DNA of 63,034 nucleotides, the filler included, from Octopus bimaculoides (taxonomy: Eukaryota): NCBI RefSeq assembly GCF_001194135.2. It is 4 parts of 3 records of this genome, joined end to end, with 100 filler letters (N's around TTAATTAATTAA, not from the genome) between each part and the next. Parts side by side here need not be neighbours in the genome. Positions count along the whole stretch, not along the records: positions 55,175 to 63,034 come from NC_068987.1; 3 more parts are not named here. The stretch is one strand, 5' to 3'. The position numbers and the translations under genes are program-made. Of the stretch, positions 55,001 through 63,034 are shown in pieces (positions within the stretch are counted from its first letter, which is position 1; the number at the start of each line of letters is the position of its first letter). The notes beneath the pieces were generated by a model, which was not told the origin of the DNA, made no database searches, and was given only the letters and a program-made list of their open reading frames with translations.

Positions 55001-55487
55001 ATTAGTGGGTGCCTACGTTCTAGTGGTGGCGGTGGTAGTGGTTTATATAGTTTGAGTGGTTAAACATTGCAATGNNNNNNNNNNNNNNNNNNNNNNNNNN
55101 NNNNNNNNNNNNNNNNNNTTAATTAATTAANNNNNNNNNNNNNNNNNNNNNNNNNNNNNNNNNNNNNNNNNNNNTGTTTATTTCACCGTTTCGTTTTCCT
55201 GTCTTGTTTTCCGTCCGCCTCTACCCTCCACGAAAACAATTTAATTTGTGTTCGTGGGAAGAACCATTTTAACGATGCGTACTGCCTTAATTCTTCGAAA
55301 CGCCGGAGTTTTAATGGTGGCAGCTGATGAAGGGGATGTTTCTATGTGGCCTGCTTGTTTGTTGCACCTTGTCTACCATTTTGTCCTTGTTCTTTTGCCA
55401 CATCATGTACCCAGTTATGTATCTATATGTACATGTAGATGAACGTATATACATACATGTACATATATATGCATATACTCATATATT

Positions 55488-55525
<38 letters not shown>

Positions 55526-55526
55526 G

Positions 55527-56256
55527 CAGGGTGGGTAGAAAGTAACTAGGCCTTAGAAATTGCTTATAGAATTTGTAGCATTACTGGTCATGACGAAAAT
55601 ATTTTTTTAATAGAACACTAATTGGGATTTCTTATTTTCTTATTGTCTTATTTCTTATCTCTTATTTTGCAGATGGCCGGACGCTTGACTGTTCAGGAGC
55701 GAGCTAAGATAGCAGCACGCATTGAAGTCTAACATTCTATTGTTTTTGTTCAGAGATAGTGGCATGCATGGAAAGGTAACCGTGCAACACTACGCATGAA
55801 GACAATAAAAGGTTGTCATACAAATTTGATGACCACGCTTTCTGTGAAAGATGCAAGAAGTGGGCGTCCAACCACCCAGATCAGCGGAGAACATGGCAAC
55901 AGCGTAGAAAATGTTTCATCGCAGCCCGCAAAAATCAACACTTCCAGTAGCTCCTGAAAGTGAATTATCATGACACACAATACGTACTTTGTTGCATAAA
56001 GAATTGAATTTTCGTCCCTGGAAATCCGCTATATTGTGAGGAGTCTGCGATATAAAATTGCATTTATTACCTTGAAAAATCCGCGATATACTGAATGCGT
56101 GATAGGTGAGCTGCGACGCGATATGTCGAGGGAAAACTGTATTTACTTTCATTTTCCCATGTCAAAAAGTACATGTATCTTGTTTCAATAAATTTATAAA
56201 ACGAAAATGGATTTTATTACCAATTTTTAATGACTACTTAATTTTCACCCAGCCAA
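55527..56256 (+). mobile_element. Tc1/mariner-family element, internally deleted; pseudo-transposase begins at 55673
   Basis: MAGRLTVQERAKIAAR...SVKDARSGRP..RSAEN....FHRSPQKST...LHKELNFRPWK; ends cagggtgggtagaaag / attttcacccagc. Confidence 0.75.
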
Positions 56257-56799
56257 TATATACATATATATATATATATATACATACATATATATATANN
56301 NNNNNNNNNNNNNNNNNNNNNNNNNNNNNNNNNNNNNNNNNNNNNNNNNNNNNNNNNNNNNNNNNNNNNNNNNNNNNNNNNNNNNNNNNNNNNNNNNNNN
56401 NNNNNNNNNNNNNNNNNNNNNNNNNNNNNNNNNNNNNNNNNNNNNNNNNNNNNNNNNNNNNNNNNNNNNNNNNNNNNNNNNNNNNNNNNNNNNNNNNNNN
56501 NNNNNNNNNNNNNNNNNNNNNNNNNNNNNNNNNNNNNNNNNNNNNNNNNNNNNNNNNNNNNNNNNNNNNNNNNNNNNNNNNNNNNNNNNNNNNNNNNNNN
56601 NNNNNNNNNNNNNNNNNNNNNNNNNNNNNNNNNNNNNNNNNNNNNNNNNNNNNNNGTACAGGTAGCCAAAGTAAGGCCACTAGAGACGAACGACAGAAAA
56701 GACATGAAAACGATATGTTGCATAGAAATTTGTTATTCTATATTCAATTTATTCTTTAATTGAGAAATCAATTCTGAATTCATAATATAAATTATTATT

Positions 56800-56861
<62 letters not shown>

Positions 56862-56868
56862 TAATAAC

Positions 56869-56919
<51 letters not shown>
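56800..56919. repeat. (AAT)n microsatellite
   Basis: Directly visible. Confidence 0.95.
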
Positions 56920-56920
<1 letters not shown>

Positions 56921-56984
56921 TACAAAATTTATCATTTTATGAAAGGTGATAGATTCTGTAACATATGTTGAAAGAAATTACGTA

Positions 56985-57595
56985 AGGGCTTCTGGGTAAA
57001 CAACACTCTTTTGCTTTCTGGTTTAGAGCATAGACAAATAAGTCTTGTAAGCTACCGACCTTGGAGCAACCAACATAAAGTTTACTATGAGAAAAGCAAG
57101 GCTCGATTAAGTGCAAGTCAGTAGATTTCAAAGTTTGACCTCGAGCTTTATTAAGAGACATTGCGAAGCAAAGTAGCACTGGGAATTATGTTCGTTTGAA
57201 CTCAAATGGCATGTCTGTTGGTTTGATTGGAATTCTTGAAAGGAAAACCTCTTCCCCCGAGGCATATTCAATGATAGTGGTAGCTTCTATCACATTAGGT
57301 GATAATGTCTTCACACTCAACTTTGTTCCATTGCATAATTTAGGAGGCTCTAAATTTATAAGAATCATTATTAAGATTCCTACCTTCAGAAAAAATTTAT
57401 GTGGAGGAGTTCCAGGTGGTTCAAGGGAATTAAGGAACTCTGTTGGGTAATTGACAGCTTGCTTTTAATCAAGGACTGAATCAGCTGATTTGTAGTCCTT
57501 AATGATTGTTGGAATCTTATTCATTAACTCATGGTTAATCCTTGCTACTGTCTAAGGTTTTGGAGCAAGAATTGCCCTTTCACACCAATTTATTC
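56985..57595 (-). mobile_element. Helitron PIF1-like helicase C-terminal remnant
   Basis: ERAILAP...[17 protein letters not shown]...[13 protein letters not shown]...VFLSRIP...FEFKRT*FPVLLCFAMSLNKARGQTL...CFSHSKLYVGCSKVG, the degenerate QFPV..FAMTINKSQGQT and HGQLYVACSRV motifs. Confidence 0.93.
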
Positions 57596-58955
57596 CACTA
57601 AAGGCGGTACTCCAACATGGTCGCAGTCAGATGACTGAAACACGTAAAAGGAAAAAAATATATATGGACCAAACAATTTGATTCCAATTTGTTGATATTC
57701 TTGAGTTTCAAGCGTGATGCTAGTCTTCCGCCATTACATACAATATTCTACGAAATGAAATAATCACAGCATAAATGCTAGATGAAGCTGCTAGTAACAT
57801 TCAATTCGCAGCTGTAGTATATTGAACACTTACATTGACAATATCTACTACGCCAAAAATAAATAAAAAGGCGAGAAAAAACACGCCAAAACACATCAAA
57901 CTGTTGATGATACTACAAAATACCAGAAACATAAAAGTTGAATTTAGGGAGCTGACGATGTTGACAAAAATACAATCAACATATTGCAATCGGAAACATG
58001 AAAAGCAAATATAGTTTGAATGAAAGGGTTTGTGCATTTCATGACCGTTTATACAAATACCCATATCCTTTTTTGTATCTGTACAATATTGTCTTAATGT
58101 AGTTTTTAAATGTCCCGAATCCCTTAAAGCGTGTGTAGATTTCTTTCTAACATTCAGAGACTATACTCAGATCTACAAAATATATGGCTTCCAAGAATGT
58201 AAACCAAGTTATATCAATTTATCTAGGACAGTACAGCATGAAAGTTTATCCCTCTTTTCTCGACACACTGAATGCATCAGCCATTACCATCATTTTCACA
58301 GCAAAAAATATCGATTCGATTTGATTCTGGATGCAGTTTTCTGTAGTTTATGTTCAACAGCATAAACACAGTGCACTTATATGCACACACGCATATATAC
58401 ACTCATGTATGTATGGATATATATGTGTGTGCGCATAAATACAGGTATAAACGCCATATTTTTCTCTCTCCCTCTCTCGCTGTCTATATATACACACGTG
58501 TATGTTTTGTATCCTTTCATATATGCATGGAAATATGCAATCGTTCACACATACACCCACTCACAGTATTTCACATACACATTGATCAGTCAAATACACG
58601 CCAGCGCAACATACGTATATATATGTATATGTGAATATATAGATGTATATATATTATATGCATTCATATGTGTGTGCATGCAGATATGCATATACGTTGG
58701 TATAAAACCGTAAATTTGAAGAATAGTCGAAGCATACTTTCCCAGCGGTATTTGCTAGGCGTAATAGGGAAAGACAGATAAAACAGTGATGGTAATGACA
58801 TACGATTTACATCCGAAAGTAAAGTTGTACGCTGTGGCATTCCTTTAGTGGTGATGTGGTATTTGTTGTTAAACTTCAGTGACAATTTGTAAATGAATAA
58901 GTAAGTTAAATCTTGCTAAAATATTCGGTTTTCCTCTTATACTTGTTTGCATTTT

Positions 58956-59020
<65 letters not shown>

Positions 59021-59603
59021 ATATATATATATATNNNNNNNNNNNNNNNNNNNNNNNNNNNNNNNNNNNNNNNNNNNNNNNNNNNNNNNNNNNNNNNNNN
59101 NNNNNNNNNNNNNNNNNNNNNNNNNNNNNNNNNNNNNNNNNNNNNNNNNNNNNNNNNNNNNNNNNNNNNNNNNNNNNNNNNNNNNNNNNNNNNNNNNNNN
59201 NNNNNNNNNNNNNNNNNNNNNNNNNNNNNNNNNNNNNNNNNNNNNNNNNNNNNNNNNNNNNNNNNNNNNNNNNNNNNNNNNNNNNNNNNNNNNNNNNNNN
59301 NNNNNNNNNNNNNNNNNNNNNNNNNNNNNNNNNNNNNNNNNNNNNNNNNNNNNNNNNNNNNNNNNNNNNNNNNNNNNNNNNNNNNNNNNNNNNNNNNNNN
59401 NNNNNNNATATATATATATATATAGACAGTACTATTTCGATAGGGAGTCACCTATGTAGCTAGCTATTCACTAATCACATACGTAGCAACATTGCTACAA
59501 TCCTTCCTTATTATTTATAATTTTCACCTTCACCGTTTAGGAAATCAGCGTGTGATTTCTATAATAATCTTACAAACTGGCAAGGCAAATGGAACTTAAC
59601 CGA

Positions 59604-59692
59604 AGGCGCTCGGTGAGAGTCACTGACGAGCATTGATATAAATGCGAAATCACTGTGAGCTGGCTATGTCTAGGCACTGATAGAGCTTGCCT
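59604..59692 (+). ncRNA. Type I hammerhead ribozyme fold with a U16.1>G substitution
   Basis: CUGACGA (59623-29); stem II GCAUU/AAUGC with loop GAUAUA; GAAA (59646-49); stem III UCA/UGA; stem I AGUCA/UGGCU, extended by CGGUG/CACUG and AGGC/GCCU. The cleavage triplet reads AGC instead of NUH. Confidence 0.8.
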
Positions 59693-59851
59693 CCTTTGTC
59701 AGTCATTAAGATAAGGAGTTTTAACTCTTATTTCTAGCAGTACTGGTGATAGCAAGTGCTCTCAGTTACTTTATTGACGTATATACTTCTACCTTTCTGT
59801 TGTAAAATTGTTGCTGTTCTTGTGGTTGTTATTATCATTATTATTATTATT

Positions 59852-60138
59852 CAGTAGTTTTATTTTTATAACGTGCTTTCACTTCACTACCGAGCGCAGC
59901 TCTGTGCGCCTTGGGTATGTGCTGTGGTTTGCTGTGGTGCTCTTATGTTTACTGTATTGAAAGTGTTTTGCGTAGAATGTGTGCAGTACCCAGTAGTGCA
60001 ATTTTCTGTATGTTATATATATTTGTAAGTCCTGGTGTTTTTGTTATGTATTTGTCTGAATATTTTTTTATTATACCTAAGGCACCTACTATGATAGGAA
60101 TTGTTTCTGTTTTTAGATTCCACATTCGAGTTATCTCT
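59852..60138 (-). mobile_element. R4/Dong-like non-LTR retrotransposon 3' end, flanked by (TAA)n
   Basis: EITRMWNLKTETIPIIVGALG...IQKIALLGTAHILRKTLSIQ*, the C-terminus of a restriction-like endonuclease domain; (TAA)n at 59830-59851 and 60574-60606. Confidence 0.8.
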
Positions 60139-60573
60139 NNNNNNNNNNNNNNNNNNNNNNNNNNNNNNNNNNNNNNNNNNNNNNNNNNNNNNNNNNNNNN
60201 NNNNNNNNNNNNNNNNNNNNNNNNNNNNNNNNNNNNNNNNNNNNNNNNNNNNNNNNNNNNNNNNNNNNNNNNNNNNNNNNNNNNNNNNNNNNNNNNNNNN
60301 NNNNNNNNNNNNNNNNNNNNNNNNNNNNNNNNNNNNNNNNNNNNNNNNNNNNNNNNNNNNNNNNNNNNNNNNNNNNNNNNNNNNNNNNNNNNNNNNNNNN
60401 NNNNNNNNNNNNNNNNNNNNNNNNNNNNNNNNNNNNNNNNNNNNNNNNNNNNNNNNNNNNNNNNNNNNNNNNNNNNNNNNNNNNNNNNNNNNNNNNNNNN
60501 NNNNNNNNNNNNNNNNNNNNNNNNNNNNNNNNNNNNNNNNNNNNNNNNNNNNNNNNNNNNNNNNNNNNNNNNN

Positions 60574-60608
<35 letters not shown>

Positions 60609-60609
60609 G

Positions 60610-60642
<33 letters not shown>

Positions 60643-60645
<3 letters not shown>

Positions 60646-61432
60646 GCGATTCTTGTTGAAATGACTTCAAATTTTAACAGCCTTTGAGGAAACAAGTGAA
60701 AATTTTGTGTAATGATTGACGTTTATATTTTCAAGTATAGAAATGGCATTCACTGGAAGAGAAAACGCGTATTGTGCGTTGGAGTATGTTCGAACATAGT
60801 CGAACAAGACTGTGCAGCGTGAAAGAGATCTCTAAAAAGTCACCAACGCCAATGCAGATTTGGACATGGCACAAAAATTCAAAGAGGAAGGCTGCCTGTG
60901 CAGGGCAAAATGATCTGAACAAAAACTAACATCGGGTGAGATGGTGGAGCGGGTTCGCCAAAAATTCCTGCGAAGCCCCAAGAAGTCCCGATTCCTCCAA
61001 TGACAGGCTGGCGCGTCCTGAGCAAACGCTTGCTAATGAAACCCTACAGCTCGTTCAGGCTATAACGGCAGATGATAAGCGAAAGCGCAAACATGGGGTT
61101 ATGTGAAGGGACTGGTCTATGTTCCTCCTCTTCCTGAAAACCTAGAGGACCTGGAGCAGAGAATCACTACCGCATTGGGGACTGTTACCAAAGACATGCT
61201 GCAGCGTGTTTGGGAATACCGATTTGAGGTGTGCCGTGTCTCAGGTGGTGCGCATATTGAACATTTGTGAAATCGTTCATGGAATCCACAAACCTTGGAA
61301 TTTCTCATTCAAATTTGGAGGAATAAATTTTATGATGCTTTACATTAAGCCTGTTGAGTTTCATTTGCTTTGACAATGCAGTTCTGTGATATTTACATCT
61401 CAAATTATATCAAATTTTTTGAAGCATCTTGT
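60643..61432 (+). mobile_element. Tc1/mariner-family element (DUF4817 HTH type), internally deleted
   Basis: MAFTGRENAYCALEY...KTVQRE...IWTWHKKFKEEGCLC...VERVRQKFLRSPKKS // WGYVKGLVYVPPLPENLEDLEQRITTA...MLQRVWE/YRFEVCRVSGGAHIEHL*. Confidence 0.85.
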
Positions 61433-61445
61433 ATATTATTTATTA

Positions 61446-61740
61446 TTATTGTTTAACTGAAGGCCACGCATTCCAAGTACGTTTATCTTCACCATTTTGA
61501 TACAGCTCTAGTCTATACTGTTTTCTTTCCCCATCGTCCATGTTTCCTTCTTCACGTGACCATCTTTCTTTTCTTGCAGGGACATTCAAAAGACTGGACG
61601 TTTTATTTCTCTCTCTTCTATCTTTTCCCTTTTCAAAGAAAATATTTCTCCCAGCGTTCACTATTTTCCTCTCGTTCTGGTCTAACCTTTTCCTTATGTG
61701 TCTCCACTGTACTGTTTTTGTTCCCAACTTTCACTCTCCA
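61446..61740 (-). mobile_element. Highly decayed LINE (RTE-like) 3' end
   Basis: QWRHIRKRLDQNERK...GEDKRTWNAWPSVKQ* followed by an (AAT) tail loosely resembles RTE C-termini. Confidence 0.4.
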
Positions 61741-62677
61741 TAAATTCTAAATTTTATTTTGGAATTTATGGGAGCAACTGTCTTTAAAGACTCATATTGT
61801 CAACGAATGCTCAAAATGAAGAGTAGACACACAGCCTACAACTGATGAATGGTCCTTCCTCTGTGTTTAATTGTCCTGCTTTTACGTATTTCATGTCGTT
61901 TGCACAGCTGGTGATGTCCTGTACCCATATATGCATACACAAACAAACACACACAAACGTATATATATATATATACATATGTATAAATCAGGTACAGCCT
62001 GCGCCAGTAATAATCCCATGGAAGTTATCTCATTTACGATTTCTACCTGATCATACATAGATCATACATAGAATAACAAAATCGATGTAAATAGATATTT
62101 CTTGGAGTGCTGCTGACTGAAGGTAGGCCTAGGCCTTTGCGTCTGAAATATAAAGTTTCTACAGTGTTAGAACATTTCTGTAGTTCCTTTTCCTTTCATT
62201 TTCTAGCATATAATGTATTATGAATATATTCTTGTCCATTACCTGGGCCACTAATAGCTAAACCCTACCTAGGCTATCTAAACTAAATTTATATAAAACC
62301 AATGTAATATGTATCTCCATAATAAAATTTATATAAATGACAAGTTAACAAGAAATTACGTATAGAAATTCGTAGCTTACAGATTCTTCTGCAATAAGTT
62401 GCGATCCACTCGTGTGTATGTGCATCGCCTTGCAATGTCGTCAGAGTATCACAAATGTGAAGTTAACACAGTCCATTATATAATCTATTTTTCCCTTGTC
62501 ATTTATATTATCACTTATTACGCTTTGTGCTCAGTATACATATACTTCTCTGAAGCATATGCATATTGATTTTTAGCCGTAGTTTAGTGTCGTTATGTTT
62601 AAGGAAAATATTAAAGATATTCACAGCATCTTATGTTTTATAGGATCTCCTCTGGATGTATATGATAGATATTCTGT

Positions 62678-62724
62678 TTATTGCTGAGGAGTTGAAATGA
62701 CACCGAAACGCACGCGTCCTACAA
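62678..62724 (+). ncRNA. Minimal (Penelope-type) hammerhead ribozyme motif, partly decayed
   Basis: CUGAGGA (62684-90); stem II G(U)UG-AAAUGA-CACC with 1 mismatch; GAAA (62705-08); stem III ACG/CGU; GUC triplet (62716-18); stem I only partly paired. Confidence 0.6.
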
Positions 62725-63034
62725 TCTATTGACATCATTCATAGACCCCCCTTGTGCTTTCATAAATACCTAAGATGAAAATGTACTCACAGAAATCTTT
62801 CTAGACTAACGTACTGAATATGATTACACCAAAAATATATAATATCAATTTGAATATCAGTTTGAAAATCACTTATTCTTCTCAGAACATTCATGTGTGT
62901 TTATTTCACTCCTATGAAATTTTATGATTTGAGATTTTAAGCCACGCTATCATAACACAGCACAGATATTAAATCACCGAATTGAGTTTTCATTGCAAGT
63001 TGGTATATACATATACTTACATACATACCTATAT

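What the first reader, a model, noticed from the sequence alone, without database searches (positions are those of the whole stretch)
59604..59692. Full-size type I hammerhead ribozyme in an octopus-like genome: candidate retrozyme monomer
Seen in sequence: C3-A9 = CUGACGA; a perfect 5-bp stem II (GCAUU/AAUGC) closed by G10.1-C11.1 with a 6-nt loop; G12-A15.1 = GAAA; a 3-bp stem III hairpin; and a 5-bp stem I (AGUCA/UGGCU, one G-U), followed by an internal loop and two more helices (CGGUG/CACUG, AGGC/GCCU). Only U16.1 deviates, so the triplet is AGC rather than AUC. Established: this extended stem I and loop II layout is that of natural type I hammerheads such as the Schistosoma Sm-alpha type, and metazoan retrozymes are short non-autonomous retroelements carrying such ribozymes that yield circular RNAs. 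Inference: this is a dispersed, probably inactivated copy of a retrozyme-like family whose intact members may self-cleave, or else a natural core variant. No ORF or known feature explains it.
Basis: partly seen in the sequence, partly recalled or inferred. Interest (0 to 1): 0.88.

Follow-up and report, generated by a model that had tools for sequence, protein, structure and literature searches.

The report
Mutated hammerhead-like motif in octopus DNA
A short stretch of repeat-rich octopus DNA matches a type I hammerhead self-cleaving RNA except at one essential base, so it is most likely a dead fossil of a ribozyme-carrying mobile element, which is an ordinary finding in animal genomes.

Summary
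At 59618-59665 (+) there is CUGACGA, a 5-bp helix II closed by G10.1-C11.1 with a 6-nt loop, GAAA, a 3-bp helix III, C17 and a 5-bp helix I. G replaces the essential U16.1 at 59659.

This is rare by chance. Only 3 of 67,222 composition-preserving shuffles of the piece gave a motif as good, which scales to about 18 per 2.7-Gb genome.

It is not a demonstrable ribozyme or retrozyme:
- No Rfam hammerhead model matches it, even at E<=10 on 55 nt.
- U16.1G is a known inactivating change.
- Only helix II is predicted to form.
- There is no tandem repeat or second copy in the 731 nt between assembly gaps.
- No Penelope-like ORF lies nearby.

An unrelated, sub-threshold Rfam Hammerhead_1 hit with an intact core lies 3 kb downstream on the same strand (62678-62724, 21 bits). 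Published Rfam annotation found 235 Hammerhead_1 loci in the giant squid, and Penelope elements are abundant in octopus.

Best reading (about 0.55): a solitary, inactivated fossil of a hammerhead-bearing retroelement. Chance resemblance is about 0.3. No octopus genome DNA was reachable, so copy number and covariation remain untested.

The parts
59604..59692 (+).
Evidence: Sequence read.
59618..59622 (+). Helix I 5' strand, AGUCA. It can pair with 59661-59665.
   Evidence: Pair probability is about 0.002 in genomic context.
59623..59629 (+). Core C3-A9, CUGACGA. It fits the hammerhead core consensus CUGANGA and matches the Rfam RF00163 consensus CUGAcGA.
   Evidence: RF00163 consensus shown.
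59630..59645 (+). Helix II hairpin GCAUU-GAUAUA-AAUGC, with a G10.1-C11.1 closing pair.
   Evidence: This is the only helix predicted to form, with pair probabilities of 0.97-0.997.
59646..59649 (+). G12 A13 A14 A15.1 (GAAA).
59650..59658 (+). Helix III hairpin UCA-CUG-UGA, 3 bp with a 3-nt loop. UCAC/GUGA is self-complementary.
   Evidence: On its own it costs +1.1 kcal/mol. Pair probability is about 0.01.
59659..59659 (+). Position 16.1 is G instead of the invariant U, so A15.1 has no Watson-Crick partner.
   Evidence: U16.1G was selected as an inactivating mutation (PMC4075628). The criteria of PMC3088659 reject such hits.
59660..59660 (+). C17. In an intact ancestor, cleavage would fall between 59660 and 59661.
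   Evidence: Position follows from the hammerhead numbering applied. Cleavage itself is inferred, not shown.
59661..59665 (+). Helix I 3' strand, UGGCU.
59611..59625 (+). Competing hairpin CGGUGA-GAG-UCACUG. It sequesters the 3' end of the helix I 5' strand and C3-G5.
   Evidence: MFE and centroid structures. Energies.
62678..62724 (+). Second, unrelated hammerhead-like motif with an intact core (CUGAGGA, GAAA, A15.1-U16.1, C17) but mismatched helices I and II.
   Evidence: Rfam RF00163 gives 21.0 bits against a gathering score of 34, with E=0.27 for the piece across all 4227 families. Its hammerhead fold evaluates to +5.5 kcal/mol. Its flanks are not similar to those of the first motif.

Best explanation
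The site is a solitary, mutationally inactivated type I hammerhead-like motif. It is most likely the fossil of a hammerhead-bearing retroelement, either a Penelope-like element repeat or a retrozyme-type non-autonomous derivative, lying in transposon-rich, non-coding octopus DNA.

In the inferred intact ancestor, the transcript would fold into three helices around the CUGANGA/GAAA core and cut itself 3' of C17 (59660|59661). Because helix III is short and self-complementary, it may have acted as a dimer in multimeric transcripts.

In the present copy, G at 16.1 removes the essential A15.1-U16.1 pair. G16.1 and A16.2 can also pair with C3 and U4, and an upstream hairpin (59611-59625) competes for helix I. 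No self-cleavage is therefore expected and the site has no present function.

Shown: the motif, its rarity, the core defect, the unfavourable fold, and the absence of tandem copies. Inferred: descent from a mobile-element hammerhead.
For: - The motif is exactly as described and is unique in the piece.
- Chance is low: 3 of 67,222 shuffles are as good, and the i.i.d. estimate is about 1e-9 per nt-strand.
- Features my descriptor did not require also match natural hammerheads: G10.1-C11.1, C7, C17, a 6-nt loop II and a compact helix III (RF00163 consensus).
- An independent second hammerhead-like site with an intact core lies 3,061 nt downstream on the same strand. Rfam scores it at 21 bits, which corresponds to E of about 6e-5 per family for this piece. 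This suggests hammerhead relics are not rare in this genome.
- CTGANGA-N(8-38)-GAAA occurs 3 times in the piece against 0.33 expected.
- Rfam annotation found 235 Hammerhead_1 loci in the giant squid genome (PMC6962438).
- Penelope elements are among the most abundant TE families in octopus (PMC13282606 and PMC8967140). Canonical PLEs carry type I hammerheads that mostly occur as dispersed single motifs from truncated copies (PMC4209133).
- U16.1G is inactivating (PMC4075628).
- The surroundings are a TE mosaic: a LINE ORF2 C-terminus 89% identical to an O. bimaculoides protein and a weak Pif1-like match.
Against: - No homologous copy could be examined, so descent from a repeat family is not shown.
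- No Rfam hammerhead model reports the site, even at E<=10 on 55 nt. From the E-value scaling I estimate this means under roughly 10 bits.
- Helix III (U15.2-A16.2, 3 bp, CUG loop) and helix II (5 bp, no bulged base after A9) fit neither the canonical metazoan layout nor the PLE minimal layout described in PMC4209133.
- The G59659U revertant, in the same 89 nt, is also not predicted to adopt the hammerhead fold.
- No PLE reverse transcriptase or GIY-YIG remnant was seen downstream, and no target-site duplication was found.
- Intact stems together with a core mutation imply a young copy. I could not check whether recognisable relatives exist.
Confidence: 0.55

Rival explanations
1. Chance resemblance. 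Ordinary non-coding or TE-derived sequence happens to contain CUGACGA, a small hairpin, GAAA and short complementary stretches in the right order. It never was a ribozyme.
For: - The essential U16.1 is missing.
- No Rfam hammerhead hit was found.
- Only helix II is predicted to form, and the 89-nt fold has a z-score of -0.64.
- There is no second copy, tandem repeat or TSD.
- About 18 equally good and about 560 relaxed chance motifs are expected per 2.7-Gb genome, by scaling. A scan of many windows by a reader free to accept one core deviation will therefore meet some.
- Perreault et al. warn that consensus-conforming sequences occur by chance in large databases.
Against: - For this one piece the probability is about 4.5e-5, and about 4e-4 for a 63-kb window.
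- Unrequired details also match natural hammerheads: G10.1-C11.1, C7, C17 and compact loops.
- A second, Rfam-detected hammerhead-like site lies in the same 6.7 kb of real sequence. Both being chance is very improbable.
Confidence: 0.3
2. An active natural core variant or dimer-dependent hammerhead. Despite G16.1, the RNA self-cleaves, perhaps only in multimeric transcripts where UCAC/GUGA of two copies form an extended helix III.
For: - Some natural core variants retain low activity, for example U15.1-A16.1 (PMC3088659).
- Many metazoan type I hammerheads have a weak helix III and work as dimers (PMC7229834 and PMC4209133).
- Two copies are predicted to associate, but not through a hammerhead helix III.
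Against: - U16.1G was recovered as a mutation that abolishes enough activity to rescue a phage carrying the ribozyme.
- Mutants at 15.1/16.1 are at least 10-fold less active, and an A-G mismatch adjacent to the core is a rejection criterion.
- No second copy is nearby to dimerise with.
- The hammerhead fold is strongly disfavoured.
Confidence: 0.04
3. A member of a tandem retrozyme array, or one pseudo-LTR of a Penelope-like element. The partner copy would be hidden in the flanking assembly gaps, or would be represented by the second motif 3 kb downstream.
For: - Assembly gaps lie at 59035-59407 and 60139-60573, close to the site.
- Hammerhead pairs about 3 kb apart mark the two PLE repeats in Schistosoma (PMC4209133). 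The two motifs here are 3,061 nt apart on the same strand.
Against: - The flanks of the two motifs show no similarity: local alignment score 162 against a null of 166 +/- 22.
- No Pfam domain was found in the three + frames of 60574-63034. The interval contains a minus-strand LINE 3' end. By eye, and not confirmed by Pfam, it also contains a mariner-like remnant.
- The 731 contiguous bases hold no internal repeat of 150-450 nt.
Confidence: 0.06

Closest known systems
Type I hammerhead ribozyme (Rfam RF00163 Hammerhead_1; Schistosoma Sm-alpha and newt satellite 2 types)
   Same: Same order and topology: an open helix I, CUGACGA, a G10.1-C11.1-closed hairpin II with a 6-nt loop, GAAA, a short hairpin III and C17. 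CUGAcGAG is the RF00163 consensus itself.
   Different: G replaces the invariant U16.1. The 15.2-16.2 pair is U-A rather than the usual C-G. Helix I is 5 bp and helix II is 5 bp, against the canonical 6 and 4 (PMC4209133). RF00163 reports no match at all, against a gathering score of 34 bits. The hammerhead fold is not predicted.
Metazoan non-LTR retrozymes (Cervera and de la Pena 2020, PMC7229834)
   Same: A type I hammerhead-like motif in low-GC (39%) non-coding animal DNA with no ORF.
   Different: Retrozymes are defined by tandem repeats of about 170-400 bp, each carrying a canonical hammerhead, expressed as circular RNAs. Here there is one mutated motif, no repeat unit and no detectable TSD. 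I found no published report of octopus retrozymes.
Minimal hammerheads of Penelope-like element pseudo-LTRs (Cervera and de la Pena 2014, PMC4209133)
   Same: Mostly dispersed, solitary and sequence-heterogeneous type I motifs in PLE-rich invertebrate genomes. They share G10.1-C11.1, a short self-complementary helix III and a 4-5 bp helix I. Penelope elements are abundant in octopus.
   Different: PLE min-HHRs usually have a 6-8 bp helix II preceded by an unpaired base, and little or no helix III. No PLE ORF or partner repeat is present here.
[quoted passage not shown] 2011, PMC3088659)
   Same: A near-consensus hammerhead with one core mutation and a mispair adjacent to the core, located in repeat-rich DNA.
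   Different: Membership of a repeated element is not shown for this site.

Membership tests
Hammerhead ribozyme, type I | Conserved core C3 U4 G5 A6 N7 G8 A9 and G12 A13 A14 | tested here: met
   CUGACGA at 59623-29 and GAA at 59646-48.
Hammerhead ribozyme, type I | A15.1-U16.1 base pair (U16.1 invariant) | tested here: not met
   G at 59659. This is a rejection criterion in PMC3088659, and U16.1G is inactivating in PMC4075628.
Hammerhead ribozyme, type I | H17 (not G) at the cleavage site | tested here: met
   C at 59660.
Hammerhead ribozyme, type I | Three helices around the core, with helix I open and pairs adjacent to the core in helices I and II | tested here: inconclusive
   Complementarity exists at 5/5/3 bp, with the G10.1-C11.1 and A2.1-U1.1 pairs present. 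Only helix II is predicted to form: helix I has pair probability of about 0.002 and helix III about 0.01, and all three core helices form together with probability 3e-7.
Hammerhead ribozyme, type I | Score at or above the Rfam gathering threshold for a hammerhead family (RF00163, GA 34 bits) | tested here: not met
   No hammerhead family is listed at E<=10 on 7.9 kb, 221 nt or 55 nt.
Hammerhead ribozyme, type I | Loop 1 to loop 2 tertiary contacts of full-length natural hammerheads | not testable with these tools
   Loop II (GAUAUA) has the canonical 6-nt length. The proposed internal loop and extension of helix I have pair probabilities at or below 0.02. No 3D or comparative test was possible.
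Hammerhead ribozyme, type I | Helices maintained by covariation among homologues | not testable with these tools
   No homologous DNA could be retrieved.
Hammerhead ribozyme, type I | Self-cleavage activity | not testable with these tools
   This needs an in vitro transcription and cleavage assay.
Metazoan non-LTR retrozyme | Tandem repeats of about 170-400 bp, each carrying a type I hammerhead | tested here: not met
   No direct repeat or tandem period of that size occurs in 59408-60138 or elsewhere in the piece. Assembly gaps limit the view to 731 nt.
Metazoan non-LTR retrozyme | Canonical, self-cleaving hammerhead in the monomer | tested here: not met
   The core is mutated at 16.1.
Metazoan non-LTR retrozyme | Low GC (<45-50%) and no coding capacity | tested here: met
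   GC is 0.39 for 59425-59825. Only ORFs of 35 aa or less overlap the motif.
Metazoan non-LTR retrozyme | Many genomic copies, and expression as linear and circular RNAs | not testable with these tools
   No octopus genome or RNA-seq data was accessible.
Penelope-like element pseudo-LTR hammerhead | Location in direct repeats flanking an RT plus GIY-YIG ORF, with partner hammerheads about 3 kb apart | tested here: not met
   A second motif lies 3,061 nt away, but its flanks are unrelated. No Pfam domain was found in the + frames between and after the motifs.
Penelope-like element pseudo-LTR hammerhead | Minimal architecture: helix II of 6-8 bp with an unpaired base after A9, and helix III absent or 1-2 bp and palindromic | tested here: not met
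   Helix II is 5 bp with no bulge. Helix III is 3 bp with a CUG loop. Architecture taken from PMC4209133.

The most novel reading that the evidence does not exclude
Octopus genomes harbour an undescribed hammerhead-bearing repeat family, retrozyme-like or PLE-derived, with this particular architecture: a 5-bp helix II with a GAUAUA loop and a UCAC/GUGA helix III. Its intact members would carry U16.1, self-cleave, and might give rise to small circular RNAs in cephalopods. This locus would be one mutated copy.
Probability: 0.2. Interest if true: 0.4.

Novelty: new member of a known kind. Interest (0 to 1): 0.17.

Why it matters
If a family with intact copies exists, it would extend ribozyme-bearing retroelements, and possibly their circular RNAs, to octopuses. 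I found no published description of these in octopus, although 235 Hammerhead_1 loci were annotated in the giant squid. As it stands, the locus is a single inactivated motif with no evidence of function. Its main value is as a search seed, and as an example of how a near-consensus hammerhead can fail the standard tests.

Tried and rejected
1. Rfam cmscan at permissive thresholds on 7.9 kb, 221 nt and 55 nt gave no hammerhead hit on the candidate.
2. The many mir-297/mir-466/mir-3149 hits are (TA)n/(CA)n low-complexity artefacts well below their gathering scores.
3. A tRNA-derived SINE head was considered. ARAGORN found nothing in the piece, and no Rfam tRNA, 5S or U-RNA hit was listed.
4. I tried to reach other copies through predicted proteins:
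   - The 42-aa frame across the motif gave no hit.
   - The two octopus-like LINE proteins are not on record for contig look-up.
   - Ten window ORFs are not in the collection.
   - More distant LINE homologues lie on TARA Oceans and other ENA contigs. These share only about 68% of the LINE coding region and nothing of the candidate.
5. Exact-pattern scans of the metagenome and viral collections for CTGACGAGCATT-N(4-8)-AATGCGAAA gave no match.
6. The PLE pseudo-LTR pair hypothesis for the two motifs was rejected. The flanks are unrelated and no RT or GIY-YIG was found.
7. A 22-nt direct repeat (59541 and 59646, 16 of 22 identical) does not extend beyond 22 nt, so I treat it as chance.
8. Two Pfam calls with raw six-frame references failed because of stop codons.
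9. A first Markov simulation was too slow and was replaced.

Full report
**Where the sequence comes from.** The piece (55175-63034) is AT-rich (34% GC). It has three assembly gaps, at 56299-56655, 59035-59407 and 60139-60573. A LINE ORF2 C-terminal fragment at 59952-60137 (-) is 89% identical to Octopus bimaculoides protein A0A0L8I0U5, so the octopus attribution holds. The candidate sits in a 731-nt island between two gaps.

**The observation.** G16.1 is at 59659 and C17 at 59660. The two distal complementary stretches are also present. A descriptor scan of both strands finds this as the only type I hammerhead-like site. It appears only when position 16.1 is left free or when one core deviation is allowed.

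**Is it more than chance?**
- In 67,222 shuffles that keep local composition, 93 contained any type I motif with at most 1 core deviation and helices of at least 4/4/2 bp.
- Only 3 contained one as good as the candidate, with helices of at least 5/5/3 bp. That is about 4.5e-5 for this piece.
- Scaled up, this is about 4e-4 for a 63-kb window, and roughly 18 strict or 560 relaxed motifs per 2.7-Gb genome.
- An i.i.d. calculation agrees, at about 1e-9 per nt-strand.
- The core plus three helices is therefore unusual for one window. A reader scanning many windows would still meet such motifs by chance.
- The distal helices add nothing. Their pair probabilities are 0.0001 and about 0.02.

**Tests of the ribozyme reading.**
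- Rfam lists no hammerhead family on the candidate at E<=10, whether 7.9 kb, 221 nt or 55 nt is searched. From the E-value scaling of the other hit, I estimate this means under roughly 10 bits, against a gathering score of 34.
- The 89-nt MFE (-25.6 kcal/mol, z = -0.64) is not the hammerhead fold. It contains a hairpin at 59611-59625 that sequesters part of helix I and C3-G5.
The best structure containing the three core helices evaluates to -16.7, and the probability that all three form is 3e-7.
- In a 181-nt context only helix II forms (p about 0.99). Helix I has p about 0.002 and helix III about 0.01.
- The G59659U revertant, in the same 89 nt, is not predicted to adopt the hammerhead fold either.
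- Nearest-neighbour models ignore tertiary contacts, and many animal type I hammerheads have a weak helix III and act as dimers. This therefore weakens a ribozyme origin but does not exclude it.

**The core defect.**
- A15.1-U16.1 is, after the core itself, the most conserved pair of the motif.
- Mutants at 15.1/16.1 are at least 10-fold less active. Standard curation rejects any core change, including at U16, and any mispair adjacent to the core. [quoted passage not shown]
- U16.1-to-G was recovered when phage MS2 was selected to escape an inserted hammerhead (PMC4075628).
- The present copy is therefore expected to be inactive.

**Tests of the retrozyme reading.**
- Animal retrozymes are tandem repeats of about 170-400 bp with a canonical type I hammerhead, expressed as circular RNAs (PMC7229834).
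- Here there is no tandem period of that size, no second copy of 59425-59830 anywhere in the piece, and no convincing TSD.
- A solitary monomer, or copies hidden in the gaps, cannot be excluded.
- I found no paper reporting octopus hammerheads or retrozymes.

**A second motif.**
- Rfam reports a sub-threshold Hammerhead_1 match at 62678-62724 (+). It scores 21.0 bits, with E = 0.27 over all 4227 families, which is about 6e-5 for that one family in this piece.
- It has an intact core (CUGAGGA, GAAA, A15.1-U16.1, C17) and a 14-nt helix II hairpin of canonical length. Helices I and II are mismatched, and its hammerhead fold is unfavourable at +5.5 kcal/mol.
- It lies 3,061 nt downstream of the candidate on the same strand. 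That spacing recalls the two repeats of a Penelope-like element.
- However, the flanks of the two motifs are unrelated. No Pfam domain is found in the + frames of 60574-63034. The interval holds a minus-strand LINE 3' end.
- The two motifs are therefore not a pseudo-LTR pair. Two independent rare hammerhead-like sites in 6.7 kb of real sequence nonetheless argue that hammerhead-derived sequence is not rare in this genome.

**Background that sets the prior.**
- Penelope elements are among the most abundant TE families in octopus, with old and recent activity (PMC13282606 and PMC8967140).
- Canonical PLEs carry type I hammerheads that are mostly found as dispersed single, heterogeneous motifs from truncated copies (PMC4209133).
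- Rfam annotation of the giant squid genome listed 235 hammerhead 1 loci (PMC6962438).

**Conclusion.** The most likely reading (about 0.55) is a solitary, inactivated fossil of a hammerhead-bearing retroelement. Chance resemblance remains substantial (about 0.3), because the family test could not be run and the architecture fits neither the canonical nor the PLE-minimal layout. An active core variant (about 0.04) and a hidden tandem or PLE partner (about 0.06) are unlikely. Type I hammerheads and their mutated relics are well known in animal genomes, including cephalopods, so the finding is of low interest unless a genome-wide search shows an intact, expressed family.

Noticed in passing
window 62678-62724 (+): Second hammerhead-like motif, found by Rfam RF00163 at 21 bits (GA 34). 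Its core is intact, including A15.1-U16.1 and C17, but helices I and II are mismatched. A perfect 6-bp distal helix (62665-70/62724-29) could extend helix I. Local GC is 47% with four CpGs. It is unrelated in sequence to the main candidate.
   Followed up: partly
window 57952-57996 (+): Third CTGACGA...GAAA co-occurrence in the piece, all three being on the + strand (3 found, 0.33 expected). CTGACGA is followed directly by a 6-bp hairpin (TGTTGA/TCAACA), but 11 nt separate that hairpin from GAAA, so it is not a hammerhead.
   Followed up: partly
window 59952-60137 (-), tail 59829-59851: C-terminal end of a non-LTR retrotransposon ORF, 89% identical to O. bimaculoides A0A0L8I0U5. It is followed on the minus strand by about 100 nt of 3' UTR and an (AAT)n tail. 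The ORF runs into the assembly gap at 60139. The candidate lies about 135 nt beyond this tail, on the opposite strand.
   Followed up: partly
window 56940-57464 (-): Broken reading frames resembling the C-terminal part of a Pif1/Helitron-type helicase. Pfam gives only a weak Pif1_2B_dom match (E = 0.036). They sit next to a 40-copy (TAA)n microsatellite at 56802-56922.
   Followed up: partly
window ~60741-61267 (+) and ~55700-55954 (+): Frames that by eye resemble the N-terminal HTH region and the C-terminus of mariner-type transposases, for example '...LPENLEDLEQRITTALGTVTKDMLQRVWEYRFEVCRVSGGAHIEHL'. This suggests internally deleted DNA transposons. Pfam gave no significant match, so this rests on recollection only.
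   Followed up: partly
window 59541-59559 and 59552-59559 vs 59646-59653: A perfect 7-bp hairpin GAAAUCA-GCGUG-UGAUUUC lies 105 nt upstream of the candidate's GAAAUCA. Its 3' arm GUGAUUUC is exactly complementary to GAAAUCAC (G12 through helix III 5' strand) of the candidate, giving another competing pairing. The 22-nt direct repeat (16 of 22 identical) is probably chance.
   Followed up: partly
window 55404-55540 and 58362-58705, both strands: Numerous Rfam mir-297, mir-466, mir-3149 and mir-1277 matches at 20-45 bits, against gathering scores of 81-100. They fall on (TA)n/(CA)n-like low-complexity sequence and are artefacts, not microRNA genes.
   Followed up: yes
window 56299-56655, 59035-59407, 60139-60573: Three runs of N (357, 373 and 435 nt), each bordered by microsatellites: (AT)n, (TCTA)19 at 58956-59032, and (TAA)n at 60574-60606. 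They are scaffold gaps of a short-read draft assembly and they limit every repeat test made here.
   Followed up: yes
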